A stretch of DNA of 64,000 bases from Schizochytrium sp. TIO01 (lineage: Eukaryota; Protista; Bigyra: Labyrinthulomycetes). Both the position numbers and the translations under genes were made by a program. Below, one piece after another: positions 2 through 30,200 of the stretch; position 1 is the first letter of the stretch; each line of letters opens with the position of its first letter. The DNA lies in NCBI GenBank assembly GCA_004764695.1, contig SMSO01000032.1:7162483-7226482 (forward strand), in the 5' to 3' direction. The notes beneath the pieces were generated by a model that ran no database searches, was not told the origin of the DNA, and saw nothing but the letters and a program-made list of their open reading frames with translations.

Positions 2-1357
2 TGTGTCGAGTCTAACTCAGACTATGGGATGATAGAATCGGAGCTTCAGTACGATATCAATTTTACTGTTCAGGAACTATACAAAACACAGAATAGTCTA
101 GGTTTTGGCGTTGTCTCTGTGGAAGAACATCTTGTTGGCGTATCAAAACTCGCCACTGACAATGAGACTTACCAGATGAAATTGGAATTGAGAGCCCATT
201 CCCGCTCTAATGCGCAGGACACTTATGGAATTCCCTGGCAGGATATTCTTGTATACCTTTTTGCGTTTGATCTATGTATGAACGTTTTTGCAAGACTAAT
301 GACGACACCAGTGCTCTTAAATGGAGTTAAAATCCGTAAAACAAAAGTTTTGGTGAAGGCAGATCTAGCTGGTGGTTTATTTACATCACCTGGGCGTTAT
401 TTTTCTATGTTTCTTCTTACGATTGTTTTTGGAGCACAGAATTACGTATTTTTAGATGCAGGGCATTACCCACATTCAATGGTATCTCATGTATGGTCTA
501 TTGCAGGTATTACCTCAATGTCGGGAATGCTTCTCACGATCCTCATGACGGGCACTGAATACAGATTTTTCACCACAGGTACTATGTTGTTCTTCCTTGC
601 CGGATTTGCTCGGGCAATCTTGTTGCAGCTAGTGATGGACAATGCGCAAACTTCCGTACGCAAGATTGGTCAGGTGCTGGAAAGGGATTGTACCCTCTTT
701 GATGAAGAGCATATGCACCTTAGTGAGATTCGTTGCAATGTTGCTGATAGTGTTGGAATGTCTGGATTGGAGGTGTCCTATAAGATTTTCTTCGAACCAG
801 TTGTAGTTACGATACTTTTGGTTTTCGCTCTTGAGATTATTGTAATTTTGTTCCACATTTCATGGTTTTGTATTAAAAAACGCGGGAAAGTTAACCCATC
901 TACTATGTCACACTCCTCCGGTACCATGTCCATAAACAGTCGGCACAGATATCGCGTGAGCGCACAGTCGACTATTCAAGGTGTCAGCGATTATGACAAG
1001 TGCGTTCTTCTCAGTAATCTTGGACACAGCCATTTTAGTCGTCAATGGGCAAGCCCAATCAACACGGTCCTGGGAAAGTTCACGCATGCCAGTACATCAA
1101 TCGAAGATGACCTAGTAATGTACGGGCCAGTCCTAATTAAGATGAATTATTTCCCTTACGCAGCAATAGCAGGGCGGATTCTAGGAAAGCGAGAAACGGT
1201 CGAGTGGATTATTCGGAATAAATTTTATGTTGGTGTATTAGCTTCAAATGGAAAGTTAGCGTCGAAACGTGAAAATGGCATCAAAGTAAGCAACTACATT
1301 TCTGAATATAAATTTGACGAAATGCCTTATCTGCTGAGCGGGGAGCCACTGCAGTAA
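2..1357 (+). CDS. Hypothetical multi-pass membrane protein, 5'-truncated by the window edge
   Basis: The 442-aa ORF from 29 is open in frame back to position 2. It has several hydrophobic segments (ILVYLFAFDLCMNVF, YFSMFLLTIVFG, VWSIAGITSMSGMLLTILM, VVVTILLVFALEIIVILF). Family not recognised. Confidence 0.6.
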   Translation, partial: CVESNSDYGMIESELQYDINFTVQELYKTQNSLGFGVVSVEEHLVGVSKLATDNETYQMKLELRAHSRSNAQDTYGIPWQDILVYLFAFDLCMNVFARLMTTPVLLNGVKIRKTKVLVKADLAGGLFTSPGRYFSMFLLTIVFGAQNYVFLDAGHYPHSMVSHVWSIAGITSMSGMLLTILMTGTEYRFFTTGTMLFFLAGFARAILLQLVMDNAQTSVRKIGQVLERDCTLFDEEHMHLSEIRCNVADSVGMSGLEVSYKIFFEPVVVTILLVFALEIIVILFHISWFCIKKRGKVNPSTMSHSSGTMSINSRHRYRVSAQSTIQGVSDYDKCVLLSNLGHSHFSRQWASPINTVLGKFTHASTSIEDDLVMYGPVLIKMNYFPYAAIAGRILGKRETVEWIIRNKFYVGVLASNGKLASKRENGIKVSNYISEYKFDEMPYLLSGEPLQ

Positions 1358-1908
1358 GACGTAAAGAACCTTGATCAATCGATATGCTACTTGTGATGCA
1401 AATATCAGCTCGGAGCATCCTACGAGGCGCAGCATGTGACATTAAATTCGACTTGACAGTTTATAGTCAGAGGTCCCATTCGCTCAGGTAAATATTTCAA
1501 ATTGCATATTTTTATTTGCGATTCATAGCTGATCCTGCTCAGTCCTCTAATTAATTTTGTGGACTTAGAGTTATGAGGCTATACAAGCGATTCTACTCAT
1601 ATAGGCTTGGAGTCTTTGCGGGAAGCGCTGTTGCTTCCAAGTTTATATGTATTATATTTTAATCATACAAGAAAATGTATCTCTCAACCCTTCCCATTTT
1701 TTTTTTTTAAAGTTCATGCAAAATCTACTAGTATCAAAACAAATTAACCAAATTGATTAAAATTTTAACCAAGAAGGAAACAGAAGCAAGGTATCATATG
1801 GATCTAAGCGAGGGAACTTAATCGTTGGTCAACAATAAAATTTAATTTCTATCTATCAGAAACCTCTCATACAGTATCCAAAAATAGCTCAGAACTCATA
1901 CTGGGTTT

Positions 1909-3810
1909 TCAATATTGGTCCAGCTGGACCCCACCCAAGGAAGCAACTTCTTTTAGTGCTTGCTCTACTTCGTAAGCAAACTCTTCTGAGTCGGTGTCTG
2001 AACTGCTGCGTTTCGACTCAACGCATAAAGTAACCTCGTCTTTGCCAGGGATATAGCATATCCCATATCCATTAGAAATTGCGGCTCCAAATAGACCACC
2101 AACAAATGGTCTTGAAATATAGGAGTTATTGGACGTCGATAAAATGAAGTTGGTAGCTTTGGCAAAGACAGGGTGACGAAATAACTCTGGTGTTGCTCCT
2201 TCAAACCGAAGACCAAGCAAATGTCGATCAATACCACGCCCGATTTGCCCTTTTTGAATATACTCTACATGCATATCGCATGCTTTCCGTAGATACTCGC
2301 CGGCTTGAGGAGATTTCGAAAGAGCTGCATTCACGAATTTTTCACTTGCAGTAGACACGACTCGACAGGTTTCTGTTCTTCCCTTGAAGAATTGCACCAT
2401 ACCAATAGTTGCATAGGTAGGTGGAGGCAAAGTTGAGCCTGTTCTACGGCGCCATGCAAGTTGCATTGCCATGTGCACTGCAGCATCGGGGCTAATTTTC
2501 GCTTCTTTCCAAACCTGCCGGCCAAGTCCGTAGCATTGATGAACAAAGACATCAGAATCAGCTATTTCAATGTCAATAATACGCTCAGCTTCTCGAATCC
2601 AGTCAAGAGATTTCTCATCTAAACTAAATTGGACTCGCTGGAACGGAAGAACAGCTCCTTTCGACATTGAGTCGTTCTCTTTCGTTGCTTCATCCTCAGC
2701 ATATGGGAGTGCATGATCGAGAAACATTCCCAAGGGAACAGGGGCATCAGCCCAACTATGCTCTACATTAATGGATGGATTGCCATCTTCTTTGATTCTC
2801 AATTGAAAAGATTTATCAAACCAAGAAGAACGCCCATCTCCAACAAGACCACTCTTGGCACATTCAGAATTGGTCGTGTCAATTCCATCTTCCAGCGAAA
2901 CAGCAAAAATGCTTGATTCAACTAAGTGCAACGCATCAACATTAGAAACAGAATTCAGCATGTGAGTTCGTGCTTGTGCCCATTGTGTCCGTGGAAGACT
3001 TGTTAAAACCGGAACTGGGTTGGGATCATTTCCTAGAGTTTTAGCTTCCTTTTGAATAGCACTAAATGTGGCTTTCAGATCCTTTAAAGAAACCACCTCG
3101 CGGCCTGAGAGGACAGGAACCGCATACAATCGCCTACCAGCAATAACAATAACGTGCTTGGAATCTTGCTCTTGATATTTTTCGAGGTGGTCCTCCTCGA
3201 TGCCAGGAACTCTGTTCAGCGAAAACATACGTTTATATTGCTCCATGCATTGTGGCGCGCCTCCACGGCCTTCGGACGCTGGAACCTTTTCCTTAAGAAG
3301 CTGGATATGATAAAGTAAAGCGCCCCGAGTTAACGCGGCTGCAGAGAAACATTGATTCCATTGCTTTCGTGCATCACCAAACAGGTAGCCCGCTACATTA
3401 CTGTGAATAGGCAACCCTACGCGCCATTGCATGTATGCACCTGGAATCCAGATATGATCAAGCCAGTTGCGATCCCTTTCAGCATAAGCCTCCAACTTGG
3501 CATGTGCAGCAGCAACACTGGGGTCCTTTTTTGCTTCTTCAACAAGATGTGCGACTTCTTGTATATCACTCTCTGTCTGCAAATATGGCCGAACGGTTTG
3601 CAAGAATTTGTCTAAGGTATCTTCAACCTTTGGCAGTGGAAGTTGAGGTAGGCTGTCCTGGTTTGCATATGTCGATGCAAAACGTTGACCTACATCTTGC
3701 GAACGAGGTCGCGCGATCGTAAAAGCAAACGAATAGGATGGAGACGCCCCAGCACTCAGCAATTTTAGGTTGCCATGATAAAATGTCCTCCGCAACATCT
3801 GGCTCCGCAT
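1909..3810 (-). CDS. Carnitine/choline O-acyltransferase (CrAT/CPT family), probably mitochondrial
   Basis: N-terminal LPQLPLPKVEDTLDKFL signature, RNWL, WFDKS, catalytic EHSWADA, GRTET and GIDRHLLGL. The N-terminus is Arg/Ser-rich and transit-peptide-like. Confidence 0.93.
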   Translation of the reverse strand: MRSQMLRRTFYHGNLKLLSAGASPSYSFAFTIARPRSQDVGQRFASTYANQDSLPQLPLPKVEDTLDKFLQTVRPYLQTESDIQEVAHLVEEAKKDPSVAAAHAKLEAYAERDRNWLDHIWIPGAYMQWRVGLPIHSNVAGYLFGDARKQWNQCFSAAALTRGALLYHIQLLKEKVPASEGRGGAPQCMEQYKRMFSLNRVPGIEEDHLEKYQEQDSKHVIVIAGRRLYAVPVLSGREVVSLKDLKATFSAIQKEAKTLGNDPNPVPVLTSLPRTQWAQARTHMLNSVSNVDALHLVESSIFAVSLEDGIDTTNSECAKSGLVGDGRSSWFDKSFQLRIKEDGNPSINVEHSWADAPVPLGMFLDHALPYAEDEATKENDSMSKGAVLPFQRVQFSLDEKSLDWIREAERIIDIEIADSDVFVHQCYGLGRQVWKEAKISPDAAVHMAMQLAWRRRTGSTLPPPTYATIGMVQFFKGRTETCRVVSTASEKFVNAALSKSPQAGEYLRKACDMHVEYIQKGQIGRGIDRHLLGLRFEGATPELFRHPVFAKATNFILSTSNNSYISRPFVGGLFGAAISNGYGICYIPGKDEVTLCVESKRSSSDTDSEEFAYEVEQALKEVASLGGVQLDQY

Positions 3811-4878
3811 GATGCCCTCTCTTGTTGACCTCAGATACCAGAATACTCAATTTAGGATCTGATTTGGGTTAAGGGCGCATTTGGTCGACCTGGATATCAG
3901 ATTTATAAATAAAAAAGTAAAAATAAAAAACTCATAACCAACCATAATAATAATCTACTAGCCTTAGGAAGGAGGAGAGAAGAGTACTAATAGGAGTATA
4001 TAAATGTTTATCCTTTCCAATTTTTCAATCTGTTCTTTTCAATTCAAAAATAAATAAATAATACAGTAAAAGATCGGAATGGAAATGCGTGCAGAGACAT
4101 TTGAAATTCACAATAAATACCTCTGGGGTCCCTACTTTGCGAAACAAGGTGCGCTATTACAGCGCGCATGGCTCTGATAGGCTGCGTCTATAAATAAATT
4201 GTAATTGATAAGGCATTGTTTTGATTTTTTTTTCATGCAAGCAAGAACAGTTTGACCAAATAAATGATTAATTAGAGCCCTACATTGGTTGGGTTTAATT
4301 GATGTTTCATGATTAAGACAGGCAAACTCAAACTAACCTCATCTTAAATAATGAGAATATGAACTTAAATCGTGGAGCAACAGGATTCGTTCTTAGAATA
4401 TCCTTGTAATATATCAGACACTTGACTCGTGAGAGGCACTCCAAGCTAATGTTTCGAGGTCAACATTATCGAACATGTGTGCAAGCATCACGTCTATAGT
4501 GCATCTTTAAATCAAGAGAGTGGAAAGGATTAAGATCACCATGGTACGTACTCTGTTTTTTTTATTTAAAAAAAAGGAGAAATGATTAGTTGCGAGATGT
4601 CGCCGAAAAGGCACAATTTCAAGTACATACCTAGGCTCATCTGCTGCAAACCAAAGATGGGCACGTGCGACGAAAACATTGCGTATCGTATAGATCTGAT
4701 AATGACATAAATCACTTCTTTTATAGGTTGGTATGGAACTGTTCACTTAGTGGGAAAATACAATCTTCATTTCAATTTGAAGAAGTCAGCTGGCATTGTC
4801 ACTGGAATCCATAAAATCCCAAGTTGTCCCTGTTCGGACAGTAGCTTCAATAGTGTTGTCTTGAGATGCGATCATTCC

Positions 4879-7800
4879 TCATTTTGATTCAAGCCCTTTG
4901 CGCAGAATGGATGCCAAATCGCCATTATTTTCTGGAGTACTACTTTTCGGACGCATGTATCGCGGGGAATCAGATTGCCCAAGAGGTTTCAAGGTTGCTC
5001 GGCCAGGTACAATGGATGTTTGCAAATTCGTAGGAAGGTGTGAATCAGGAGGCGATGGCGCTGGCTTTGGTGGGCGAGGTGGTGCGGAAAATGATGATTC
5101 TTCTGAAGCAGTTGGCGCTGCACGAGATGGTCGAGAGAATTGACGATCATGCACATATAAACTTTGAGAATCGGTATCGTCATCAAGATCTGCGGTGGAC
5201 TCCTCCTGAACTCGCGGCATATTAGGCGGCACCGAGGTTCTTCGTTGATGAGAAGGAGGAGGGCGAGACTGTTCAATCGTATCTGGTGCAGAAGGTGCCA
5301 TATCCTCTATGATATGGTTCACCAAGTTGTCAACAATCTGCTCCATTCGACCAGGATCTTCATTGCAAACCTGTTCAATCTTTGCAGCATTTTCACAAAC
5401 CTGTTCCACTATTCGGTGAAGTTTTTGGCGTAGTGCCTTGGTTGAAGAACTGTTCGTGGTTGCAGCAGCTGTTGGGGTACACGCATTGGGGTTTAAAAAA
5501 GGGTGTGATAAAAGTCCCCGGCGGCCATTCTTGTCCACGATTGGCGACCTTCTTGCTGGATCAAATTGCAAGCATTCTTTGATGGAGTCGACCATGTCAG
5601 GATAGGGTACTTCGAGCTCCGGAAATGCAATCTTATAGTTGGGATCCGAAATGCAATGGATTTTTTGAATAAGTTTCAGCTCATGAAATGGCGTCTGTCC
5701 ATAGACCAACAAGTACAAAATACATCCCATAGACCAAATATCACTTGCCCGGCCTTGCTTGAGCTTCATCCCTGGCGCGCCAATTTTGGGTCGGGAACCT
5801 GGAGCACTATTGATATCAATAATTGATTCAGGGCTCATAAAATTAAGAGTTCCAACCTGGGTGTCGCGCATGATATTAGTTGTGTCATTGGAGATTGCTT
5901 TTGCAATGCCAAAATCAATAAGCTTGAGTTTGCCTTTCACGAACAAAAAGTTTGCAGGCTTTAGATCGCCATGAACAATCCGCTCTTCATGAATCGCATG
6001 CACGGCTTGCAGCATATTCATCCACACTAGCCGAATGAAATTCACAGAGAGATTGCCTACCATTCCTGGTTCTGGTTTTGCTGCTCGCTGCTGTTGTAGC
6101 ATAAGATTCAAATCTATCTCTCCATGTTCCATAACAACATAAATGACTTTTCGTGAATGGTCAATCTCAGAGTCAATCAGAGTAATAATATGCGGATTTC
6201 CACGAAGTCGTTCCAATAGAGAAATTTCATTCTTGAAGCTGCTCAGCGCGGATGCGTCCGATCGAGAGAGTTTGATACGCTTCAATGCGTATATTTGGGG
6301 TTCATCCTCCCCTATAGCGAGAACCTTGAAGACTTTACTTGATCCACCACGTCCAATTACTGCGAGGCGTAAATAAGGACGACCATTTACCATGAATAAG
6401 TTTTTGTTTGAAAACATAGAGTCATGAAACCCCCGCGCCTCTACAGGGAGACTGTCTCTTCTGTCGCCATGTTGCGCAATTCCAGAAGTGATGCTCGCAT
6501 TTGCTGATAGGCGAGGTTCCTTCGCAGCAGAGCCTTCCAATCCAGAATGCGTCCTGCGTAGAACTACTGTGGGAGGCTTGTCATCAACAAGTGGAGCTCT
6601 TACCGTAGGTTTTGCAGGAGCATCTTTATCTTCTTGATCTCCAATCGGCATTGTCTGGGTTGGCTCGTTTTCCTTGAGCGGTTCCGGGTGTGTGTCCTGA
6701 TTGGGGGATCGCAAAGCATGTTCTGGTTTCCAATTTTTAATGTAACTCAAATCTCCTATCCTTTCCTTAATTGAACTCTTGTCTGAAGAAGGTGTCAGAA
6801 CACTTCCTGTTCCCGTACTTGAACCATCACCTTCAGCAATTACGCCCAGTGAAGAGTCTGGAGAAGATTGTGGATCTCCCGAGTTGGAAGCTCCTGGACT
6901 TAACACCGTTTCGTTTTGGTTTGGCACAGTTAGCCCTGTCTCTTCATCCTTGAGCACTACGCGTTGAGCACGACCAATCTTTGTGAGCTTCGTTTGCTTA
7001 CTGAGCAACCCAGTACGCTTTATTGAACTGCGCAGGGCCGTTGATCGCACACCTGTGCGACTGGAGTTCAACACTACGGTAGGCTCGGCTTTTGCAGGTG
7101 TCGCTGATAGCTCATTCTCTCTTGAAGATATTGTTCGCACTTTACGTGAGGCTGCGCCTCCTGAATCGCGACGCTTCTCAGAATTATCGTTAATGTTTGT
7201 TGGGCTAGTTACGCCTTGTGATCTAGAAGACCCAGATGACCCTGATTGAAAGGCGACTGTTACATCACCGTCGACTTCTGTTTGACTTTTCGCGAGCCAT
7301 GATTTAAGAATTGAACTTTTCTGGTTTGAATCAATGACTTTACTCTTCACAGCGTAGTCAATTACTTGAGCTGCCTCATCTATCGAGTAGTTCCGGGCCG
7401 CGAAACCAGACCATTGCTCATACAGCTCCTTGTAGTACTTGGCAATTCCACACTTGAACATGTGTTGGTAAACCAACCGAGCACACTTGGGCATGCCTGA
7501 TTTTTCCACAAATTGTGCGAGGGAAAGCCATATTCGGAGTTTGCTGTATGAGGCATTTTGCAAGTCCTTTGTATCCTGCTCGAGAAGTTTGATTTGTGCT
7601 TGAGTGCTAGCCTCCGGAGACAAATGCACGAGACAGGCGGCATCGTGCTGGAACAGAGCCTCGCAAGATTTGGTCTCAGTGCTTTCTTTCTGCAAAGCGG
7701 CATTCACTAAAGAACGCCGCGCAGTACTTGCAGGCGAGCAGAGCTCGGAGATCTCCTCACTCACATTATCAATATTGGAGGTGTCAAATGCCAGTTTTCG

Positions 7801-22181: not shown

Positions 22182-22985
22182 TGTAAAAGCGCGGCTGCAG
22201 AGAACGGTCTCCTCGACGTGGAGGTATGAACGACTCGCCTTGATTGCACACGTCTGAGACCATGAGACCATGGCCGTGCCCATGATTTATTGCATCATGA
22301 TCTTGAGTTCATTATTGTTGAGCCTCGGTAGGTATGATCTTGTCGGCTCACGGGTCATAATGGTTTCATTTCGTGTGCATTCATTCCACTCTTAGTTTCA
22401 AAGCTGGCAGTTCTGACCCTTTTTTAAAGGAGAAGAAGTGATGCATTGCCCGACGCCGTTGATTGGTCAGCCGATGCTCATCGCCCACACTCCATCAGCG
22501 GTCCTGGCCGTATGTCGATGAGCGAGATGAGCATGATCACTGGCAGCTGCAATGCTTTCCGTTCTACCCTCGAGGGCGCATGGCTGCAGCTGGGCTCCTC
22601 AATCCTGAATCACCGCCAGAATCCCAGATCTTCATCCTCTTTAGTTGTAAACAGGCCTTTCTACTCTTCTTTGTTATTGTTATTTGTTTACCTGTCTATC
22701 TTTTTTTCTTTTTTTTTAAAGTAATTTTTTTTAAAGTAATATAACCCTGGCTAAATTCAAAATGTCCCGAATTATGTCCGCAAAATATTTTTGACTAAAA
22801 TCGCCAGAAAACCCTGTAAAGATCTAAAATCGTAAATTTGATTGTATGATCATGTTGAAACAACTGTTTCCCTAAACTGAGCACGATTTCTTTGCAGAAG
22901 CAAGCGTATTGAGCTCACGCTACTCGTCCAAAAATTGGCTCACAACCTCGATAAAACGGCCTAATAGGGCAAATAGGCCTTTAGA

Positions 22986-23012
22986 TTTTCAGGACGTAAT
23001 ACGTCCTGAAAA
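22986..23012. repeat. Subterminal palindrome of the transposon (left), TTTTCAGGACGTA-A-TACGTCCTGAAAA
   Basis: Perfect 13-bp arms around 1 nt. Homologous to the right-end palindrome. Confidence 0.85.
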
Positions 23013-23205
23013 ACTGAACTTTGCATTAGCGAAAACGTATAAGAGTTTGGGTATTTTGGTTAGTTTAATAGTTTAGTTAATATAAACAATAGTAGTTTAT
23101 TTTTGCGTTGCTCAAGTCGGAGAAACATCTAAAGATGAAGATTTCGCGATAAATGAAGATTTTATATAAGCTAAATGTAATATTAATTTTTTGTGTGGAT
23201 AATTT

Positions 23206-26200
23206 TTATGTATGGAAATGAGGAATCGTAATTTGCTCCTCGCTATGAAATTTGATATTGCAATGCTTACAAATGTAAGCATTGCAAGTTTGGCACCATC
23301 GAGTGGTCTTCCGTGGATTACGATATGGATGGTCTGGCGCCGATCCCCGTTCGCAATCAACACAACACATAATGCAGGCTCCCCTCTTCTTGAACTTGCC
23401 CACGCATTCATGCTGTCCAACTAAACGAGTTTGTAGAAGTTCTGGGAGTCGTGACTTACTGTATTGATACTGTTGCGGCGATTCTAGCGAGGCTGTAGAA
23501 GTAGGCGAAATGGTGTTATCAGTTGCTCTCCAGCAGAATTCTATGTCAGACATGGAACAAGTATTGTCAAATGGGTAAAGGGATTCCATTGAGACAACCC
23601 TAATTTCTTCTGCGAGACTACTTAGATAGCCTCTATAGCAGCACAGATTTTTGCGTAGCATTGACCATTCCGTAATTGTTTTACACTTCGATGTGAGGTT
23701 CCGATGCTCCATTGAGAGGAGCTGATACGCTCGAAACGAGTTGTATAAAATATAGTCAATGAATGTTAAACAAACCAAAGCATTAGGAGTCAGCTTTGAA
23801 GTACGAATGCTCGCTCCATTGATAGTTTTTCTAGTGATATCAACTCCGCCCATCATCTTATTCCAGACACTAACAGTCAAAGGCAGTAGGCGTTTGCAAG
23901 GCGGTGGGGTTCCGTTGACCAGCACGTCGTCACTATGCCTCCGCCAAAGCTGCAAAGCGAGTTCGGCACTGTGTAAATCCACAGCATAACCCCAGTCTGG
24001 TGATTGGTCTGGTGCAAAACGAGGAAACCTACCAAGTTGATTGCCATAAGCAAAGCCCATGTATTCATCACTCAACGCTTTGAAATACTCACGCCATGAC
24101 TGGCGCTGGGCACATGAGACTTTGATTAGCACTCCTTGCATGATTTCCTCAGTTGTGGCATATATAAGGAGGGTGTAAGGGACATCTAAAGTAGCTGCAT
24201 GATGGATACACTGAGTTCGAAACGACGGATTTGGGACTAACGACTCGAACTCACTTGTTCCACATTTGCATTCGTGCCACGCACTCTGACCAGCAACTCG
24301 AGACTTTAACTCATCTATAGTTTTGGCATTTGTACTTGTTTTGATTTCTAAGGCAAATACATCATCTATAACAAAATTGTTTCCTTCTAGCTCTGTATTC
24401 CTCAAAAGAACAGCTGCACCGTCGGGTGAGTCTGCTACAAATTGGACTTCCCGATTAATAATCAGACCATATTTGCGTAGCTGGAGAATACAGAATTTAT
24501 TGGAACTTGCTTTCTTAACCCATCTGGAAAGATCTTTCGCCACGTCTGCCTCATTTTCAATCCCCAAAGCCAGTGGGTTTTTATGATTCGAAAACCCATT
24601 TTGAATAGGCTTCATAAACCAACTTGGTGTGATTGTTCTAAGAAATGATTTCTGGCGTTCCTCGAAAGTGCATGTATGGTTATCATCAATCGTTTCAGAA
24701 TTGTGCAAGGGAAAGCTGTCCCCAATGTCACTACTGTCACTCATTTCCAGCAGGTCTTGAGTAGTGGACTCCTGAGATGCATGCTGAGGGTGTATGTCTT
24801 CCTGTAAGGAAGATAGTTCTCCGTTTGAGACCGTTTCATGATCTATAGTTCTTGATAGGATGTCTACGATCCGCTTGGCTAGTTCGATCTTTTTGCCATC
24901 AGTCTTTGCACCTACATCCAAAGAAAGTAACTTTTGGATAAGCTCATTTTTGTTCATACGTTGCATCCAGTATGTATATTCAAGAATAAGACCCTCCCCT
25001 TGACGCTTCCTTTTATATTGCTTCTGAGCTCCTTCAGATGAATAAGAAGAACGCTTATTAGGACGGGGGAATAATGAGATAATTCGTTGCGGGTCAAGAC
25101 AAGCGAACGATTTCACATCGTGGTGTAAGGCCATAAGCTCATCCGAATGAACGAATGGAGCATTTTTAAAGTTGATACAGGTAAAAGCACCGGTGCTTGT
25201 AATTCTAAATTGCCGAGCCATAAACCAGTCAGGTGTTCTTTGGGAAATTGTCATTGAGAAGATATTGGCGTTCACAAGGTTAATTTTATGATTAGCTTGT
25301 GCCTTCATCTTATATGTACTCATGTCACACGGCTCTATCTCAATCTCAGCATGTGGAACGCGCTTTACACCACCTGGTGAGTTCCAATCTACTCCAGCAG
25401 GAAGTACTTCGTAACTCCAAACTTGGTCAGCCAAACAACGGTCGTTCGTGATGAGTTGTGCAACTCTATGCTTTCCCGCACCGTGACGCATCATCATCGC
25501 AGCAACAAAATCGCCATTCTGGTATCTTTGAGCGGTGTAGGTGCTTCGACGGCCATTCCTGTTAATGATAGTTTGACTTCCCCTCACAGGCGTAGCAGGA
25601 ACTGGTCCTTCAACATCTATAAACGGGAATGACGAGGTCTTGCGACAAGTTCCAAGAAATTTGACTCCCTTTGACTGAAGAATTTGAGTTATGTTTGTTG
25701 CACGATCCATATCCTGAGGTTTCGATAATGCCAGATAACCACGATCAATGAATACACGAAGCTCTGAAGACACAGACGCATCAGGGCTTTCTCCTGACTC
25801 CCCCTCATTCAGAAAATCTATTGCCTTGCTTACAATTTTATGAACAGGTGAGTGGGAAGTCTCTAACCGTGGTACTAGGAGCAGACCTGTACCCACAGAG
25901 CACACAAGATGTATCACGGGTTTCTGTTTTTTTGTTTTCGTTGGAATGGTACGAATTCCAAAATTCTCCCACTGAGGAGAACCATAGGGAAGCTTGTCGT
26001 CATCAAGATCGATCCAAGTGGTTTTAGGGACAAAGAACATCTTCACCCAATGGCGCTGAGCAGCACCTCCCATTTCATGGATGATCGGACTTGAGGAGCA
26101 TACTCTAGCCTCGCGTGACCCTTTTGTTGCCCGATTGGACTTGTCCAGGCTCATTGCCTTTCGAACTTTTGAATAGGATACCGTATGGGCTAGATTCCAA

Positions 26201-26721
26201 TGACCTGGTGGGTCCTCAAGACACTCCGAGAACGACTTTCCTGCAACTCGCAGAGAAATTTCAACGAGAAGGTAGGCACGGAAATCTTGATCCGTGATAG
26301 AAAATGGCGGAGATGCGTTTGAGCTAAGACTATTCAACCATTCCTTAACTGCAATCACCCAGCCTGGCGGCAAACAAATCTTGAAACTATCAAGCCTGGT
26401 AAATTTGTAGTTATTGTCAACACGAAGAACCTTTCGAATCCTTTTAGTAATCTCCGAACTTTCTTGTTGAACCTTGGGGAGCATTAATTCGCTTGAGCAA
26501 TTGTACTTGAGTTGGACTGCGTTCATGCCAAGTTGAGACCCAGATAGGTTGCTGTGGTACTTTGCGCCTTCAGTGGAGTAAGATTGAAAGGTCCAGTTTT
26601 CATGGCCAGGAGTACTTGCCGATGAACACTCATAGAGATCGTTCTCGTCTTCATCAGAAGAAGACTCATCAGAGGAAATGTAGATTGAGTCCTTGTCATT
26701 CTCGACGTCATCTAGAGACAT
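23206..26721 (-). CDS. piggyBac-type DDD transposase with inserted YqaJ/lambda-exonuclease and SAP domains and a C-terminal Cys-rich domain
   Basis: Acidic N-terminus; WIDLDDDK (D1); VFIDRGY (D2); FLGTCRK; QRTPDWFMARQFRITST; SAP-like MNKNELIQKLLSLDVGAKTDGKKIELAKRI; GIENEADVA; GL...VADSPDG; LEIKT; QCIHHA; WNKMMGGVD (D3); LYNSFRAY; CIMC...RKTTRWCQTCNAYICKHCNIKFH. Confidence 0.85.
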   Translation of the reverse strand: MSLDDVENDKDSIYISSDESSSDEDENDLYECSSASTPGHENWTFQSYSTEGAKYHSNLSGSQLGMNAVQLKYNCSSELMLPKVQQESSEITKRIRKVLRVDNNYKFTRLDSFKICLPPGWVIAVKEWLNSLSSNASPPFSITDQDFRAYLLVEISLRVAGKSFSECLEDPPGHWNLAHTVSYSKVRKAMSLDKSNRATKGSREARVCSSSPIIHEMGGAAQRHWVKMFFVPKTTWIDLDDDKLPYGSPQWENFGIRTIPTKTKKQKPVIHLVCSVGTGLLLVPRLETSHSPVHKIVSKAIDFLNEGESGESPDASVSSELRVFIDRGYLALSKPQDMDRATNITQILQSKGVKFLGTCRKTSSFPFIDVEGPVPATPVRGSQTIINRNGRRSTYTAQRYQNGDFVAAMMMRHGAGKHRVAQLITNDRCLADQVWSYEVLPAGVDWNSPGGVKRVPHAEIEIEPCDMSTYKMKAQANHKINLVNANIFSMTISQRTPDWFMARQFRITSTGAFTCINFKNAPFVHSDELMALHHDVKSFACLDPQRIISLFPRPNKRSSYSSEGAQKQYKRKRQGEGLILEYTYWMQRMNKNELIQKLLSLDVGAKTDGKKIELAKRIVDILSRTIDHETVSNGELSSLQEDIHPQHASQESTTQDLLEMSDSSDIGDSFPLHNSETIDDNHTCTFEERQKSFLRTITPSWFMKPIQNGFSNHKNPLALGIENEADVAKDLSRWVKKASSNKFCILQLRKYGLIINREVQFVADSPDGAAVLLRNTELEGNNFVIDDVFALEIKTSTNAKTIDELKSRVAGQSAWHECKCGTSEFESLVPNPSFRTQCIHHAATLDVPYTLLIYATTEEIMQGVLIKVSCAQRQSWREYFKALSDEYMGFAYGNQLGRFPRFAPDQSPDWGYAVDLHSAELALQLWRRHSDDVLVNGTPPPCKRLLPLTVSVWNKMMGGVDITRKTINGASIRTSKLTPNALVCLTFIDYILYNSFRAYQLLSMEHRNLTSKCKTITEWSMLRKNLCCYRGYLSSLAEEIRVVSMESLYPFDNTCSMSDIEFCWRATDNTISPTSTASLESPQQYQYSKSRLPELLQTRLVGQHECVGKFKKRGACIMCCVDCERGSAPDHPYRNPRKTTRWCQTCNAYICKHCNIKFHSEEQITIPHFHT

Positions 26722-27194
26722 GACACACAGCTGACGTTAAACTCAAGCGCCAATGGACCTCTTCGCTGAGGGAAGTGCTGATAGATCCCAAGTAGACTAG
26801 CAAGTGGACGATGAAGTAAGGTATGATGTACTTTTGTTGGTACTGCTGGCACTACATGCTGGCGCAAGATATTATTGATGTTTATCAGTATTAATTGTCT
26901 GGTAGAACAGGTACCGTGGGAGAACCTAACGACCATGTGTCAAATACCTGTTAACCTAACCACCACCTAACCGCCACTGAGAATGTCATTGTTTGGTCCT
27001 AAACTCAACTATCAATCGGAGAATCATGAGAACATGATAACATATGGACAGGTGAGGTCGGGGAGGGTAAACTAAACGAGTTTCATCCCGAACAGAGCTA
27101 GACTGTTGAATTGATCAATGACTCAAGTAGGTACATATTTTTCGGGACGTAATAAGTCCTTAAATACTCTACCGGGAAAATTAAAGTTTATCCG

Positions 27195-27225
27195 ATTTTT
27201 CGGGACGTAATACGTCCCGAAAAAT
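27195..27225. repeat. Subterminal palindrome of the transposon (right), ATTTTTCGGGACGTA-A-TACGTCCCGAAAAAT
   Basis: Perfect 15-bp arms running into the terminal TAGCCAGGG. A degenerate copy lies at 27137-27160. Confidence 0.88.
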
Positions 27226-30200
27226 AGCCAGGGATAACAAATTAGATAACTTGAAATCAATATATTTATGTCTTATTATTCTTTTAACTAAGATATAATA
27301 GATAAGTAATACAGAACGTGTTGCTTTCCAACAGATCGTGGTAACTTGATCGATTGAATGAATGTGGTTGAAACCTTCCGCGGTCTCCGAGGTTTCCATG
27401 CAGGCGGTACTCACTATCAAGTCGGGGCGCCTTCTACGCCTTAGACGGGCGATGTGCAGGCTGGTTTTTTCGAGGCAAGCCAGAGGCTCCACCCACTTTT
27501 CAAGATCGCCAGCCCTTTGATGTCTCCGGCAGCGCGTGCAATGACAACGACACTTGTGGCGGTGCAGTGATATCATAATACCTTTAGAATAATAACAATA
27601 ATAATTGTTATGCGCCCAAAAGATCATGCGTAGCTTAGTTGTCCAATAGCAAAGCGATAGGAGACTGTAATAGGAAGATAGAATCCAATTTCATTTCAGG
27701 GAACACACTTCATTACACTTTTGTTTATTTTACTTTTGCTTTTGCTTTTACTTTGCTTTTACTTTTGCTTTTATATCTCTCTCAGGTGTGTTTGTTTCAC
27801 TTAGCCGGGCATAGAGTAATTATGCAGTGGTAAAGAGAATCGAAAGTAGCTCGCTCAGGCTTTTATGTGTGACGCCATTAGACTTTATAAAGAGGGATGG
27901 GGCTACGTACTACTGAATGGAGGAGTTTGCGAACCATGGCGGCCTCGGTTTACTATTTATTTTATTTCCATCATGTTGTCACATCAGAGGCAATGAAACT
28001 TGCGAGTTCCTAGCGATGATGTGGAGCGCCTGAGTTGTTTATGCCCTCAGCGAAATGTAGTACCTCTGAGATCCAGCGCCGCGTTCTCTGTTCTCACCTC
28101 CTCGCGTGCCGGAAAGTCTGCGCTGGACAGCGGTGAAATCTTGGGGCTTTCAGGTTTCTTCGTTTAGTGAAGACCAACTCAAAGTGCGAGAGAACTTCAG
28201 AGCAAAACCAAACAACAGAAGATGTGTAAAGTGCACAATCGATGAGATCTTCGAAGAACGCAAATGCAAAGCTGGGCATCGAATACTGTGGATTATGACG
28301 TTCTACATGGACTCCAAAAGCCTCACAGAGGTATTTATTTTTCTCTAAGCTTTGAGAAGAACATTGTTGGTAACGCACCAAAAGAGGTGCAAAGGAAGTC
28401 TGCACGGGTGTCATTGCATAAAGAAGGGGGAATGAGGCGCACTCATGATCATTAGCATCATCTAGAAATCGCCCGTGGCTTCAGGTCCCCTAAATCAGGT
28501 AAGGCAGTCCCAACACACCATTGAGCCGTCCAGTTAAGTTTACGCCAAGCTTCAGATCTTCGAACAGACCATTTCATAGTGGATACGTACAGAGTTAACC
28601 GAGCAAGAAAACAACGACTATCTCACGACCACCGTGCTTTCATTAAAACACGTGCGTAAAACTAGACCCAGTGCTTGGCCGATGTCACTCTTAAGAAAAC
28701 TTGGTCCCTCTCAAAGTCTGCGCTTAAGCAATCGCATCGATGATCGATCAACTGAGACTACGCCTTGAACACGTCAGTAGGCACCCTTAGCATATGACAC
28801 TGACACTGGCACATCAAAGCAGCAAGGTAGTTTGATTTGAGGTGCATACACAACCTCTTCTACGGCATGTGCTTCGAAATTCCAGATCCTGGAGTGCACA
28901 ACCTTGCAATCATATGTGCAGTTTTATTCCCAATTCTTTTGAGCCTCGGGCATCAATTATCAAAGAGTTTGCAATACATATATGCATTGCATGCATGCAT
29001 GCATACACAACAGGGCAAGTACGCAAAATATGGATCTTCATTGTACAAGTCAGCCCTTTTTCATCATCTTCTTACTTCTTGTTTCTCCTAATTTCTTCTT
29101 TTTCAGTTTGTTTCTTCACCGAAATAATAATAATAATAATAATAATAAAGTTGCCTCAAGCCACAGCTGAGTGATTCAACAGCCTCTCAGAGAACTACTA
29201 CACTAGCACTAACAGTACCCAAGTATGCCGGACTTGTAAGTTCTGAGAACCAGTGAGCCTCCTTCAGGGCCACCTCGGTTCCCAAAACCCATTATAAAAC
29301 CATCTCCAGAGCATTTTCCGCCTGTACCTAGCTACCTATCTCAATAGCAGTAACGTAGCAGTTCTTCATCCAAAACATAATTATCGCAATGGTTGGTAGT
29401 ACCTACCTACTCCTAGGTATACGCATTTGTAATTTTCTATGATGGTTTGCTAATTTTATCCTATTTAAGAAAAGATCTCGTGTGTTCTGTTCTATCGTAC
29501 GAATATGATATAACATTTTAAATTTTATTTTCCACCGCTGGTAAATGACGCAGATATAACATAAAACTTTAAACATTAAGGAAAAACTAAAGATGAAAAA
29601 TGAAAAATGAAAAACTAAAATGAAAAACTAAAAAGGTGGGCGCTTTCCAAATGATCGTGATCTCCCTCAGGTTGTGCACAAGCAAGCTCGAGACAAGAAC
29701 TGGTGGCATTGGCGGTGTTCGAGGGCTTATTAGATCTCCGTGGGCCAGGCTCGCTTTCTAGATCTCGATGTTTTCTGGTAGCTGGCAACAACCATATGCG
29801 AGCCGCTCTTCGAACGGTTGTGCACACACACATTTCTTGAGGAATCGTTCTCTGGCCATGCCAGTAATGAATGGTTTTTCTTTCATTCATCAAGCCTTTG
29901 GTTTACTTGTTTACAGTGCAATGCACTTATTTCTTTTTTCATAGTCTCCGCGGTTCACGACGACAACGATAAGTCGATCACTCTGAAGAGTATCACGATG
30001 ATTGACCGTCACCAGTTTGCCAGGCATCACGATGGTGTGTAATCAACTCGCCTGTCTGAGGATAAGGTTGCGAAGCAGCATTTACATTCTTAATTGATTT
30101 GATCTTGAAGATTTGACCTTGGAGATCTGATCTCCAGGTTCAACTTGAACAGTTGGCTCAAGGCGCATGAACGCGCAGATTCTCGACAACGCCGGGAATC

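What the first reader, a model, noticed from the sequence alone, without database searches (positions are those of the whole stretch)
23206..26721. piggyBac transposase with a YqaJ/lambda-exonuclease domain nested inside its DDD catalytic core
Seen: one uninterrupted 1,171-aa ORF, roughly twice the size of a typical piggyBac transposase. The piggyBac motifs are in order: D1 WIDLDDDK (~26000), D2 VFIDRGY (~25740), GTCRK (~25645), D3 WNKMMGGVD (~23850), N..Y helix, C-terminal Cys-rich domain. Between D2 and D3 sit about 400 extra residues with ordered YqaJ/lambda-exonuclease motifs: QRTPDWFMARQFRITST (~25240), GIENEADVA (~24550), GL....FVADSPDG (~24425), LEIKT (~24345), QCIHHA (~24205). Established: canonical piggyBac has a single RNase H-fold nuclease, cuts via hairpins and needs no exonuclease; lambda-exonuclease is known to accompany other superfamilies such as ISL2EU and some Kolobok groups. 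Inference: this is a two-nuclease transposase. A 5'->3' resection nuclease tethered to the transpososome could process donor flanks, steer repair, or promote recombination-based copying. I do not know of this nested architecture being characterised, but divergent Repbase groups (piggyBacA, piggyBacX) should be compared first.
Basis: partly seen in the sequence, partly recalled or inferred. Interest (0 to 1): 0.92.

Follow-up and report, generated by a model that had tools for sequence, protein, structure and literature searches.

The report
piggyBac transposase with nested exonuclease
This is an intact, very recently active jumping gene of the piggyBac type whose single enzyme carries a second, complete DNA-degrading enzyme (lambda-exonuclease type, with a small DNA-binding SAP module inside it) spliced into the middle of its catalytic core, a design shared by a large unannotated protein family in diatoms, oomycetes and plasmodiophorids and not described in any paper I could search.

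Summary
Window 23206-26721 (-) is one uninterrupted 1,171-aa ORF inside a 4,489-bp element (22745-27233). The element has CCCTGGCTA/TAGCCAGGG ends and a 4-bp duplication (ATAA). The genome holds seven copies, 99.8-100% identical.

Pfam alone sees nothing in this protein. Three other lines of evidence agree:
- **Family profile against the PDB.** A profile of 36 full-length relatives hits piggyBat and piggyBac transposases in three collinear pieces (D1+D2, D3, Cys-rich tail). Between D2 and D3 it hits LHK-Exo, mimivirus R354 and a Ku70 SAP domain.
- **Structure.** An AlphaFold model (pLDDT 82) superposes on piggyBac at Z 24.9 across both sides of the insert, and on lambda exonuclease at Z 12.5.
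- **Conservation.** 30 of 36 relatives keep both catalytic sets: D240/D326/D961, and R503/E724/D767/E792/K794.

All nine datable insertions have perfect NTAN duplications; only one is TTAA.

The best reading is a two-nuclease piggyBac transposase whose tethered 5'->3' exonuclease processes the 5'-phosphate ends made by transposition. The architecture is shown; the role is inferred.

The scan had already found the same family on other copies in this genome (s1-831035, s1-825049). I class it as a new variant of a known kind.

The parts
22741..22744 (.). Left target-site duplication, ATAA
   Evidence: Seven copies aligned with their flanks; similarity stops here and the same 4 bp recurs at the other end.
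22745..27233 (-). Whole transposon, 4,489 bp; the transposase gene runs on the minus strand
   Evidence: Boundaries come from seven copies at 99.8-100% identity on five contigs.
22745..22753 (+). Terminal inverted repeat CCCTGGCTA (piggyBac-type CCC end)
   Evidence: (I9).
27225..27233 (+). Terminal inverted repeat TAGCCAGGG (piggyBac-type GGG end)
   Evidence: (I9).
27234..27237 (.). Right target-site duplication, ATAA
22986..23015 (.). Subterminal palindrome TTTTCAGGACGTAATACGTCCTGAAAAA; likely a transposase (Cys-rich domain) binding site, inferred
   Evidence: D1, I2. The L009 paralogue has analogous palindromes near both ends.
27139..27226 (.). Two further copies of the same ~30-nt palindrome at the other end (27139-27168 and 27197-27226)
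   Evidence: D1, I1, I5.
23206..26721 (-). Transposase ORF, 1,171 aa plus stop
   Evidence: Identical protein at seven loci.
25624..26469 (-). aa 85-366: N-terminal half of the piggyBac DNA-binding/dimerisation domain plus the first part of the RNase H-like catalytic domain, with D1 (D240, codon 26002-26004), D2 (D326, codon 25744-25746) and GTCRK
   Evidence: HMMER pairs profile positions 6-358 with piggyBat residues 37-362. The VIA alignment to 6x67 starts at model residue 85. D240 and D326 are each kept in 34 of 36 relatives.
25405..25623 (-). aa 367-439: all-beta insertion domain, as in piggyBac and Tn5
   Evidence: Strands E367-439 in the model at pLDDT about 90. 374 residues align within piggyBac chain range 117-517, which contains its insertion domain 372-433.
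25102..25257 (-). aa 489-540: N-terminal segment of the lambda-exonuclease/YqaJ domain, QRTPDWFMARQFRITST, with R503 in the position of the 5'-phosphate-binding arginine
   Evidence: HMMER pairs it with LHK-Exo 3syy residues 2-67. Q494 and W499 are kept in 35 of 36 relatives and R503 in 34 of 36. Lambda exonuclease alignments start at model residues 454-489.
24838..24978 (-). aa 582-628: SAP-like helix-loop-helix module nested in a loop of the exonuclease domain, between disordered linkers 556-577 and 629-676
   Evidence: The family profile hits the Ku70 SAP domain 1jjr at 1.6e-3. Pfam SAP is found in 12 of 36 relatives, best 2.2e-10. The SAP of P0026 maps to query 588-621. Helices 582-628 are confidently modelled. 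Pfam does not call SAP in this protein itself.
23938..24666 (-). aa 686-928: PD-(D/E)xK core of the exonuclease domain: E724, D767 (codon 24421-24423), E792 (24346-24348), K794 (24340-24342), R835, Q837, H840
   Evidence: Lambda exonuclease Z 12.5, LHK-Exo 11.6, R354 11.5. The R354 alignment pairs GL..F.A.SPDG and lEiK. D767 and Q837 are invariant; E792 and K794 are kept in 34 of 36.
23818..23898 (-). aa 942-968: return to the piggyBac catalytic domain, WNKMMGGVD, with D3 (D961, codon 23839-23841). W953-N954 correspond to piggyBac Y439-N440.
   Evidence: HMMER pairs it with piggyBac 6x67 residues 433-517, PQMVMYYNQTKGGVD. D961 is kept in 34 of 36 and N954 in 33 of 36. Residue roles are from PMC7351741.
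23581..23817 (-). aa 969-1047: C-terminal half of the helical DNA-binding/dimerisation domain
   Evidence: The VIA alignment to 6x67 runs to model residue 1047 and chain residue 517; helices 979-1048.
23242..23427 (-). aa 1099-1160: C-terminal Cys/His-rich zinc domain (piggyBac CRD-like)
   Evidence: HMMER pairs it with the piggyBat CRD, residues 514-577. C1116, C1119, C1143, C1146, C1151, C1154 and H1159 are near-invariant. Weak B-box hit; zf-Tnp_2 in one relative.

Best explanation
Window 22745-27233 is an autonomous, very recently active DNA transposon of the piggyBac superfamily. Its single 1,171-aa protein is a two-nuclease transposase.

Shown: a piggyBac-type DDD enzyme (D240, D326, D961, with the beta insertion domain, the helical DNA-binding domain and a Cys-rich tail) is interrupted by a complete lambda-exonuclease/YqaJ-type PD-(D/E)xK nuclease (aa ~489-928; R503, E724, D767, E792, K794). 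The interruption lies in the loop between the insertion domain and the D3 segment, equivalent to piggyBac residues ~421-432. The exonuclease in turn carries a SAP DNA-binding module in one of its own loops.

Inferred, first step: the DDD site does the usual piggyBac chemistry, namely a nick at the 3' end, a 4-nt hairpin, hairpin opening, and staggered 4-bp strand transfer. Target choice here is relaxed to NTAN.

Inferred, second step: the tethered exonuclease is a 5'->3' end-processing enzyme. It loads on the 5'-phosphate ends that this chemistry creates right next to it. My preferred version is that it resects the 5'-phosphorylated cohesive overhangs of the emptied donor site. That would block piggyBac's seamless re-ligation and channel the break into homologous repair from the sister chromatid or homologue, which restores the element and turns cut-and-paste into a net gain of copies.
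For: - **Mobility.** Seven copies on five contigs are 99.8-100% identical over ~4.5 kb, each with a different perfect 4-bp duplication. One older copy is 97% identical.
- **piggyBac hallmarks.** The ends are CCC...GGG. The duplications are 4 bp with a central TA in 9 of 9 insertions, including two paralogous families, L009 and L010.
- **Architecture by profile.** The 36-member profile hits piggyBat at 5.4e-10 in three collinear stretches and piggyBac at 2.1e-6. LHK-Exo, R354 and Ku70-SAP hit between D2 and D3. The R354 alignment pairs SPDG and EIK.
- **Architecture by structure.** The AF2 model has pLDDT 82.4 and pTM 0.77. It matches piggyBac at Z 24.9, rmsd 3.9, 374 residues, model range 85..1047, so the two halves re-form one fold around the insert. 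It matches lambda exonuclease at Z 12.5 over 202 of 228 residues. Foldseek agrees.
- **Language-model neighbours.** For aa 680-930, 28 of 30 named neighbours are YqaJ clusters.
- **Both sites under constraint.** 30 of 36 full-length relatives, at only 16-36% identity to this protein, keep all of D240, D326, D961, R503, E724, D767, E792, K794 and Q837.
- **Exonuclease character.** All structural neighbours are 5'->3' end-processing nucleases: lambda exonuclease, LHK-Exo, R354, MGME1, Dna2, Cas4. No TnsA or restriction enzyme is among the 50 entries listed by VIA-align. R503 lies at the conserved Arg of the QRT..W...R...T.S motif shared with LHK-Exo. Its equivalence to lambda exonuclease R28, the 5'-phosphate binder, is from my own knowledge.
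- **Rationale for donor resection.** piggyBac leaves complementary 4-nt overhangs that are re-ligated without synthesis (PMC7351741). The same nuclease type has been recruited independently by ISL2EU as a separate ORF (PMC4122938) and by KolobokE as a fusion downstream of the transposase (PMC9587614).
Against:
- Pfam gives no hit for this protein itself.
- Lambda exonuclease works as a toroidal trimer, whereas piggyBac is dimeric. Whether a nested monomeric domain is processive is unknown.
- Nothing in the data separates donor-flank resection from flap trimming at the transposon ends.
- Copy number is low (about 9). That does not argue for an efficient copy-restoring mechanism.
Confidence: 0.55

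Rival explanations
1. The exonuclease trims the transposon's own 5' flaps. Targets in this family are NTAN rather than the palindrome TTAA. The 4-nt 5' flap carried from the donor site would therefore usually mismatch the new target at its outer bases, so the canonical ligation without synthesis fails. The built-in 5'->3' nuclease removes the flap, and the gap is filled from the target strand. This activity may be what permits the relaxed target choice.
For: Nine of nine insertions have perfectly identical left and right duplications, although seven different 4-mers are used: ATAT, ATAA (twice), TTAA, TTAG, CTAT, CTAA (twice), CTAG. Ligating a donor-derived flap would give unequal left and right copies unless it were corrected, so the flaps must be removed or corrected. 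The insert sits next to W953-N954, the equivalents of piggyBac Y439-N440, which hold the flap and hairpin bases. N954 is kept in 33 of 36 relatives, which matches the retained central TA.
Against: Host flap nucleases or mismatch repair could do the same job. Canonical piggyBac tolerates mutated flanks and flaps in vivo and in vitro (PMC7351741). A processive exonuclease on the transposon end would risk degrading the non-transferred strand. KolobokE has strict TTAA duplications and still carries this nuclease type, so relaxed targets are not needed to explain its recruitment.
Confidence: 0.22
2. The PD-(D/E)xK domain is a second-strand endonuclease, as TnsA is to TnsB in Tn7. It would cut the 5' strand at the transposon ends or open the hairpins, replacing part of the piggyBac hairpin pathway.
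For: Two nucleases in one transposase is the Tn7 logic (my own knowledge). R354 and Cas4-type relatives also show endonuclease activity; that is my own knowledge, and the entry titles only name R354 as Cas4-like. The domain lies close to the DDD site in sequence.
Against: The nearest folds are exonucleases, and no TnsA or restriction endonuclease is among the 50 entries listed by VIA-align. The N-terminal W...R...TS motif with the 5'-phosphate-binding arginine is conserved. The piggyBac hairpin-handling residues (W/Y-N before GGVD) and the beta insertion domain typical of hairpin-forming transposases are retained. The 4-bp duplication and CCC/GGG ends are unchanged.
Confidence: 0.08
3. The nested domain no longer cuts DNA. 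It serves as a structural, DNA-binding or regulatory module, for example for end or chromatin binding together with SAP.
For: Some paralogues in this same genome have lost the exonuclease residues while keeping long open frames: L013 = P0015, L011 and L014. SAP is a DNA-binding module.
Against: In the mobile copies and in 30 of 36 relatives every catalytic and phosphate-binding residue is kept, at only 16-36% overall identity to this protein. The paralogues that lost these residues have no recognisable terminal repeats, so they look like immobile or domesticated derivatives.
Confidence: 0.05
4. Artefact: a chimeric or mis-assembled ORF, or an intron-containing gene in which the middle is not part of the mature protein.
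For: No RNA data could be obtained.
Against: Seven identical copies lie on five contigs. The same collinear order is found in 36 full-length proteins from independent sources, including Skeletonema dohrnii and Plasmodiophora brassicae. The middle is in frame, confidently folded, and has conserved active-site residues.
Confidence: 0.02

Closest known systems
piggyBac superfamily transposases (Trichoplusia ni piggyBac, PDB 6x67/6x68; piggyBat, PDB 9c0f)
   Same: DDD triad on an RNase H-like fold with a beta insertion domain; a helical DNA-binding/dimerisation domain built from segments before D1 and after D3; a C-terminal Cys-rich domain; CCC...GGG element ends; a 4-bp duplication; subterminal palindromic repeats.
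   Different: About 450-500 extra residues (exonuclease plus SAP) lie between the insertion domain and D3. Duplications are NTAN, with TTAA in only 1 of 9. The sequence is so divergent that Pfam DDE_Tnp_1_7 misses this protein and finds only 3 of 36 relatives. Canonical contiguous piggyBac ORFs coexist in the same genome.
Lambda exonuclease / YqaJ family (lambda Exo 1avq/3sm4, LHK-Exo 3syy, mimivirus R354 5yet)
   Same: PD-(D/E)xK core with D...ExK; the N-terminal QRT..W...R...T.S motif; a downstream conserved Q. Z is 11.5-12.5 over nearly the whole lambda exonuclease chain.
   Different: It is not a free-standing protein paired with a single-strand annealing protein. It is a domain nested inside another enzyme, with a ~145-residue SAP-containing loop inserted after its N-terminal helices. 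Its oligomeric state is unknown. Pfam YqaJ does not reach threshold.
KolobokE transposons (Kolobok superfamily)
   Same: A DDD/E transposase fused to a lambda-exonuclease-like PD-D/ExK nuclease in an element that makes 4-bp duplications (PMC9587614).
   Different: It belongs to a different superfamily (C/DxxH signature, RR...YY termini). The nuclease lies downstream of the transposase domain, not inside the catalytic core.
ISL2EU transposons
   Same: A cut-and-paste element that carries a YqaJ exonuclease (PMC4122938).
   Different: The exonuclease is a separate ORF beside a PIF/Harbinger-related transposase.
Tn7 TnsA/TnsB
   Same: Transposition machinery that combines a DDE enzyme with a PD-(D/E)xK nuclease (my own knowledge).
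   Different: These are two polypeptides. TnsA is a restriction-endonuclease-like 5'-end cutter, not a lambda-exonuclease-type enzyme. No structural match to TnsA is among the 50 entries listed.

Membership tests
piggyBac superfamily (transposase and element) | RNase H-like catalytic fold with a DDD triad | tested here: met
   6x67_C Z 24.9 and 9c0f_C Z 21.8. D240, D326 and D961 pair with the piggyBat/piggyBac D positions. Each is kept in 34 of 36 relatives.
piggyBac superfamily (transposase and element) | Match to Pfam DDE_Tnp_1_7 (PF13843) | tested here: not met
   No hit for this protein at E<=10, whole or in segments. Only 3 of 36 relatives hit, best 2.4e-10. The family profile does reach the PDB piggyBac-family chains.
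piggyBac superfamily (transposase and element) | C-terminal cysteine-rich domain | tested here: met
   Profile stretch 988-1059 pairs with the piggyBat CRD, residues 514-577, at 16.2 bits. The Cys/His columns are near-invariant. zf-Tnp_2 is found in one relative. The evidence is modest.
piggyBac superfamily (transposase and element) | Element termini 5'-CCC...GGG-3' with short terminal inverted repeats | tested here: met
   CCCTGGCTA/TAGCCAGGG in seven copies. CCCTGGAT/ATCCAGGG in paralogues L009 and L010.
piggyBac superfamily (transposase and element) | [quoted passage not shown] | tested here: inconclusive
   The length of 4 bp and the central TA are met in 9 of 9 insertions. The full TTAA is present in only 1 of 9.
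Lambda exonuclease / YqaJ (PD-(D/E)xK) | PD-(D/E)xK core fold of the lambda-exonuclease type | tested here: met
   3sm4_B Z 12.5 (202 of 228 residues), 1avq_A Z 12.4, 3syy Z 11.6, 5yeu_A Z 11.5. Foldseek probability 1.00.
Lambda exonuclease / YqaJ (PD-(D/E)xK) | Catalytic D...E-x-K triad | tested here: met
   D767 is kept in 36 of 36, E792 and K794 in 34 of 36. They are paired with SPDG and EIK of R354.
Lambda exonuclease / YqaJ (PD-(D/E)xK) | N-terminal W...R...(I/V)T(A/S)S motif with the 5'-phosphate-binding arginine | tested here: met
   QRTPDWFMARQFRITST pairs with LHK-Exo EQRTEEWFAARLGKVTAS. W499 is kept in 35 of 36 and R503 in 34 of 36. The equivalence to lambda R28 is from my own knowledge.
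Lambda exonuclease / YqaJ (PD-(D/E)xK) | Match to Pfam YqaJ (PF09588) | tested here: not met
   No hit for this protein. One of 36 relatives hits at E 0.0062, below the gathering score. Language-model neighbours are 28 of 30 YqaJ.
Lambda exonuclease / YqaJ (PD-(D/E)xK) | Processive 5'->3' exonuclease activity; toroidal trimer | not testable with these tools
   This needs biochemistry. A trimer of the domain exceeds the size limit of complex prediction, so no job was sent.
SAP domain | About 35-residue helix-extended loop-helix DNA-binding motif | tested here: inconclusive
   Pfam SAP is found in 12 of 36 relatives (best 2.2e-10) at the column range that maps to query 588-621. The profile hits Ku70 SAP at 1.6e-3. 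Helices 582-628 are confidently modelled. Pfam does not call it in this protein.

The most novel reading that the evidence does not exclude
The built-in exonuclease changes the logic of piggyBac transposition. By destroying the cohesive 5' overhangs at the donor site, and/or the donor-derived flaps on the element, it would abolish seamless excision and force homologous repair that restores the donor copy, which is effectively replicative spread. It would also free the element from the palindromic TTAA target, giving NTAN insertion. This would be a natural, single-polypeptide two-nuclease transposase with altered repair outcome and target range.
Probability: 0.3. Interest if true: 0.85.

Novelty: new variant of a known kind. 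Interest (0 to 1): 0.72.

Why it matters
piggyBac is one of the main transposon tools for genome engineering. It is valued for seamless excision and TTAA specificity.

This natural lineage has a second nuclease nested inside the catalytic core, relaxed NTAN targeting, and copies so recent that the native sequence is probably active. It offers a directly testable system for two questions:
- how a transposon can steer the repair of the breaks it makes;
- how target specificity and flap handling are coupled.

It also shows a third, independent and structurally most intimate recruitment of lambda-exonuclease-type nucleases by eukaryotic cut-and-paste transposons, after ISL2EU and KolobokE. That recurrence argues for a general selective benefit.

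In addition, it gives a name to a family of at least several hundred sequence clusters in diatoms, oomycetes, plasmodiophorids and marine metagenomes that are currently 'hypothetical' or 'SAP domain-containing' proteins.

Tried and rejected
**Searches that gave little or nothing**
- Pfam on the whole protein and on four segments found nothing relevant.
- phmmer of the single sequence against the PDB found nothing. Only the family profile worked.
- The word-index homologue search returned only the protein itself.
The 8-member alignment gave only 4 loci. The one full-length locus, L024, keeps all catalytic residues but has no recognisable CCC/GGG ends, so it added no duplication data.
- Six literature searches for any description of the fusion found none. 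Repbase cannot be searched here.

**Comparisons that led nowhere**
- The nested exonuclease was compared with the genome's standalone YqaJ ORF (L031): no significant similarity, so there is no evidence for a local donor.
- The family profile was compared with a canonical piggyBac ORF of the same genome (L029): only a weak N-terminal match at 31% probability.

- Model coordinates are not exposed, so distances between active-site residues could not be measured.
- Complex prediction was not used. A trimer of the domain exceeds the size limit, and I make no binding claim.

**Reading rejected**
- A Tn5/IS4-like rather than piggyBac identity: Tn5 scores Z 12.7 against 24.9 for piggyBac.

Full report
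**1. The observation**

The minus strand of window 23206-26721 carries one uninterrupted ORF of 1,171 codons.
- WIDLDDDK, aa 236-243
- VFIDRGY, aa 323-329
- GTCRK, aa 357-361
- QRTPDWFMARQFRITST, aa 494-510
- GIENEADVA, aa 720-728
- FVADSPDG, aa 761-768
- LEIKT, aa 791-795
- QCIHHA, aa 837-842
- WNKMMGGVD, aa 953-961
- a Cys/His-rich tail, aa 1116-1159

Off-the-shelf annotation fails on this protein. Pfam gives no DDE_Tnp_1_7, YqaJ or SAP hit for the whole protein or for four segments, even at E<=10. A single-sequence search of the PDB finds nothing.

**2. It is a mobile element, and a young one**

The protein is encoded seven times in the 64-Mb assembly at 100% amino-acid identity, and once more at 97% in a copy that is now broken. 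More distant paralogues lie at 26-40% identity.

Aligning the copies with their flanks shows that similarity starts and stops at the same bases. The DNA is 99.8-100% identical over ~4.5 kb. In the window the element is 22745-27233 (4,489 bp). Its ends are CCCTGGCTA...TAGCCAGGG, and it is flanked by a duplicated ATAA.

The seven copies sit in different places. Their perfect 4-bp duplications are ATAT, ATAA, TTAA, TTAG, ATAA, CTAT and CTAA. Two paralogous families at 38-40% protein identity (L009, L010) have CCCTGGAT...ATCCAGGG ends, with duplications CTAA and CTAG. So 9 of 9 insertions are NTAN and only one is TTAA.

There is no swarm of short derivatives; only nine matches to the terminal 200 bp exist. 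Palindromes of ~30 nt (GGACGTAATACGTCC core) lie near both ends, and L009 has analogous ones. In piggyBac the Cys-rich domain binds a palindromic internal repeat (PMC7351741). These palindromes are therefore plausible binding sites, but that is inference.

**3. The family**

An exhaustive HMMER search of 1.84 billion cluster representatives gave 491 clusters at E<=1e-3 and 35 at E<=1e-30. Full-length relatives of 1,000-1,450 aa share 16-36% identity with this protein in the alignment.

Named members come from the diatom Skeletonema dohrnii and from Plasmodiophora brassicae, where the protein is annotated only as 'SAP domain-containing protein'. The ESM Atlas places the protein in a 56-member cluster labelled Oomycota. 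The rest are unnamed metagenome or run-assembly proteins.

- D240, D326-R327 and T358
- Q494, W499 and R503
- E724, D767, E792, K794, R835, Q837 and H840
- W953, N954 and D961
- the C-terminal Cys/His residues

**4. Test of the nested architecture by sequence**

A profile of that alignment was searched against all PDB sequences.

| PDB entry | Protein | E-value | Region of the family profile matched |
|---|---|---|---|
| 9c0f | piggyBat transposase | 5.4e-10 | Three collinear stretches: 6-358 with residues 37-362 (through D1, D2, GT.R); 847-902 with 408-463 (D3); 988-1059 with 514-577 (Cys-rich domain) |
| 6x67 | piggyBac transposase | 2.1e-6 | The D3 segment: PQMVMYYNQTKGGVD pairs with P.....WN..KGGVD |
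| 3syy | LHK-Exo alkaline exonuclease | 1.6e-4 | Between D2 and D3, N-terminal motif: EQRTEEWFAARLGKVTAS pairs with sQRtpdWFllRkFriTSt |
| 5yet | mimivirus R354 | 2.1e-4 | Between D2 and D3 |
| 1jjr | Ku70 SAP domain | 1.6e-3 | Between D2 and D3 |

A second profile restricted to the C-terminal half gave the residue-level pairing with R354: GLL...F.A.SPDG ... lEiK.

Scanning each of the 36 members against Pfam gave SAP in 12, DDE_Tnp_1_7 in 3, and zf-Tnp_2 and YqaJ in one each. A language-model feature search with aa 680-930 alone returned YqaJ clusters in 28 of 30 named hits, and the best was from Nucleocytoviricota.

**5. Test by structure**

AlphaFold2 with the 36-sequence alignment gave a confident model: mean pLDDT 82.4 and pTM 0.77. 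Only the acidic N-terminus (1-39), the two linkers around the SAP module (556-577, 629-676) and the linker before the Cys-rich tail (1052-1089) are disordered.

Foldseek ranks piggyBac first, then Tn5 and piggyBat, then lambda exonuclease. VIA-align results are below.

| Structure | Z | Aligned residues | Model range |
|---|---|---|---|
| piggyBac 6x67_C | 24.9 (rmsd 3.9) | 374 | 85..1047 (chain 117..517) |
| piggyBat | 21.8 | 356 | 85..1044 |
| Tn5 | 12.7 | 303 | 107..1028 |
| lambda exonuclease | 12.4-12.5 | 202-206 of 226-228 | from 454-489 to 926-928 |
| LHK-Exo | 11.6 | 179 | 496..901 |
| R354 | 11.5 | 223 | 467..909 |
| MGME1, Dna2, Cas4 | 7.5-8.8 | 156-172 | not tabulated |

One rigid superposition on piggyBac covers residues on both sides of the insert. 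In the model, therefore, the two halves re-form a single piggyBac fold and the exonuclease folds as a separate domain. I could not measure inter-residue distances because model coordinates are not exposed.

**6. Where exactly the insert sits**

Chen et al. (PMC7351741) define the following for piggyBac:
- the catalytic domain is residues 263-457, interrupted by a beta insertion domain at 372-433;
- the active site is D268, D346 and D447;
- Y439 and N440 hold the 4-nt hairpin or flap;
- N440 reads A-2;
- T-3 sits in a pocket formed by V414, L416 and Y439.

By the HMMER pairing, W953-N954 correspond to Y439-N440 and D961 to D447. The model's beta strands 367-439 correspond to the insertion domain.

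The exonuclease-SAP module therefore replaces the short loop (piggyBac ~421-432) between the insertion domain and the D3 segment. This is right beside the residues that handle the flanking 4 nt. N954 is kept in 33 of 36 relatives. That fits the retained central TA of the NTAN targets, but the link is inference.

Within the exonuclease, the N-terminal helices (489-540) and the core (686-928) are separated by ~145 residues that hold the SAP-like helices 582-628. The SAP domain of P0026 maps to query 588-621. The nesting is thus two levels deep: DDD[Exo[SAP ] ].

**7. Are both nucleases functional?**

Thirty of the 36 relatives keep all nine checked residues of both sites, at only 16-36% overall identity to this protein.

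The exceptions are informative:
- L013 (= P0015), in this same genome, keeps DDD but has lost R503, E724, E792 and K794.
- L011, which is 99% identical to P0003 from an independent assembly, has lost residues of both sites.
- L014 has lost most of them.
- None of the three has recognisable CCC/GGG ends.
- L009 is bounded by inverted repeats and a duplication, and it keeps everything.

Mobile copies therefore keep both sites. Immobile long-ORF derivatives lose them, and they are candidates for domestication.

**8. Mechanism**

*Shown:* a piggyBac-type element with a two-nuclease transposase, recent mobility, and NTAN duplications.

*Inferred from established piggyBac chemistry (PMC7351741):* excision leaves 5'-phosphorylated, mutually complementary 4-nt overhangs on the donor flanks, which are re-ligated seamlessly. 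It also leaves a 4-nt 5' flap on each transposon end.

A lambda-exonuclease-type domain needs a 5'-phosphate end, and its phosphate-binding arginine is conserved here. It is tethered beside the DDD site, where both kinds of end arise.

- **Preferred reading.** The domain resects the donor flanks. This prevents seamless closure and channels repair into homologous recombination, which restores the element. The benefit would be general, which fits the independent recruitment of this nuclease type by ISL2EU as a separate ORF (PMC4122938) and by KolobokE as a downstream fusion (PMC9587614).
- **Main rival.** The domain trims the flaps. With non-palindromic NTAN targets, donor-derived flaps would mismatch the new target. 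If they were ligated, the left and right duplications would differ. Yet 9 of 9 duplications are perfect, so the flaps are removed or corrected. Host enzymes could do this, because canonical piggyBac tolerates mutated flaps, so the built-in nuclease is not strictly required.
- **Weaker rivals.** A TnsA-like second-strand cutter is less likely, because every structural neighbour is an end-processing exonuclease and the hairpin apparatus is retained. A non-catalytic module is unlikely, given the conservation.

**9. Novelty**

None of six full-text searches found a piggyBac with a YqaJ, lambda-exonuclease or PD-(D/E)xK domain. The closest described cases are KolobokE and ISL2EU. Repbase and subscription journals could not be checked.

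The scan itself had already flagged other copies of this family in the same genome, and two follow-ups reached the same reading (s1-831035, s1-825049). These are not independent evidence.

I class the finding as a new variant of a known kind: a piggyBac-superfamily transposon with an unprecedented nested second nuclease and relaxed target.

**10. Limits**

- There is no biochemistry.
- The organism was not identified. The relatives point to a stramenopile.
- The duplication statistics rest on nine insertions in one genome.

Noticed in passing
L011 (G000:C6:1870910-1877533), ORF 1399-5133: A 1,244-aa paralogue with an intact open frame has lost residues of both active sites (D240->H, D961->G, R503->G, E792->K, K794->N) and has no recognisable CCC/GGG ends. 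An independent assembly holds a 99% identical protein (P0003). It is a candidate domesticated or immobilised derivative.
   Followed up: partly
L013 (G000:C30:1535500-1543500), ORF 2101-6018 (= P0015): A 1,305-aa paralogue keeps the DDD triad but has replaced the exonuclease residues (R503->E, E724->D, E792->H, K794->H). No terminal repeats were found. A 509-aa ORF lies convergently just downstream.
   Followed up: partly
L028, L029, L030 (G000:C31:7606601-7607800; C13:2563422-2564621; C13:6427843-6428133): The same genome also has canonical piggyBac-type ORFs with a contiguous DDE_Tnp_1_7 domain and no nested insert (Pfam E as low as 5e-32), in open frames of 846-1,060 aa. Their ends and duplications were not examined.
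   Followed up: no
L031 (G000:C36:4088765-4089157, minus strand): A standalone YqaJ-domain ORF (407 aa, Pfam E 4e-22) lies elsewhere in the genome. It shows no significant similarity to the nested domain, so it is not an obvious donor.
   Followed up: partly
window 27181-27627 (-): A 148-aa ORF starts outside the element and ends 53 nt inside its right end. In the reconstructed empty site the open frame runs 54 nt past the insertion point (169 codons stop-to-stop). The element may have clipped the 3' end of a small host ORF, or this may be chance.
   Followed up: partly
L008/L012 (G000:C34:602116-608623): An older copy, 97% identical in protein and DNA, has a TAA stop splitting the ORF and a damaged left end (TTGGCTA instead of CCCTGGCTA). 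A further 300-bp end fragment at 85-88% identity lies at G000:C31:2011616.
   Followed up: partly
window 22710-22739: A perfect tandem duplication of TTTTTTTTAAAGTAA lies immediately left of the insertion site. The element sits in very AT-rich DNA.
   Followed up: no
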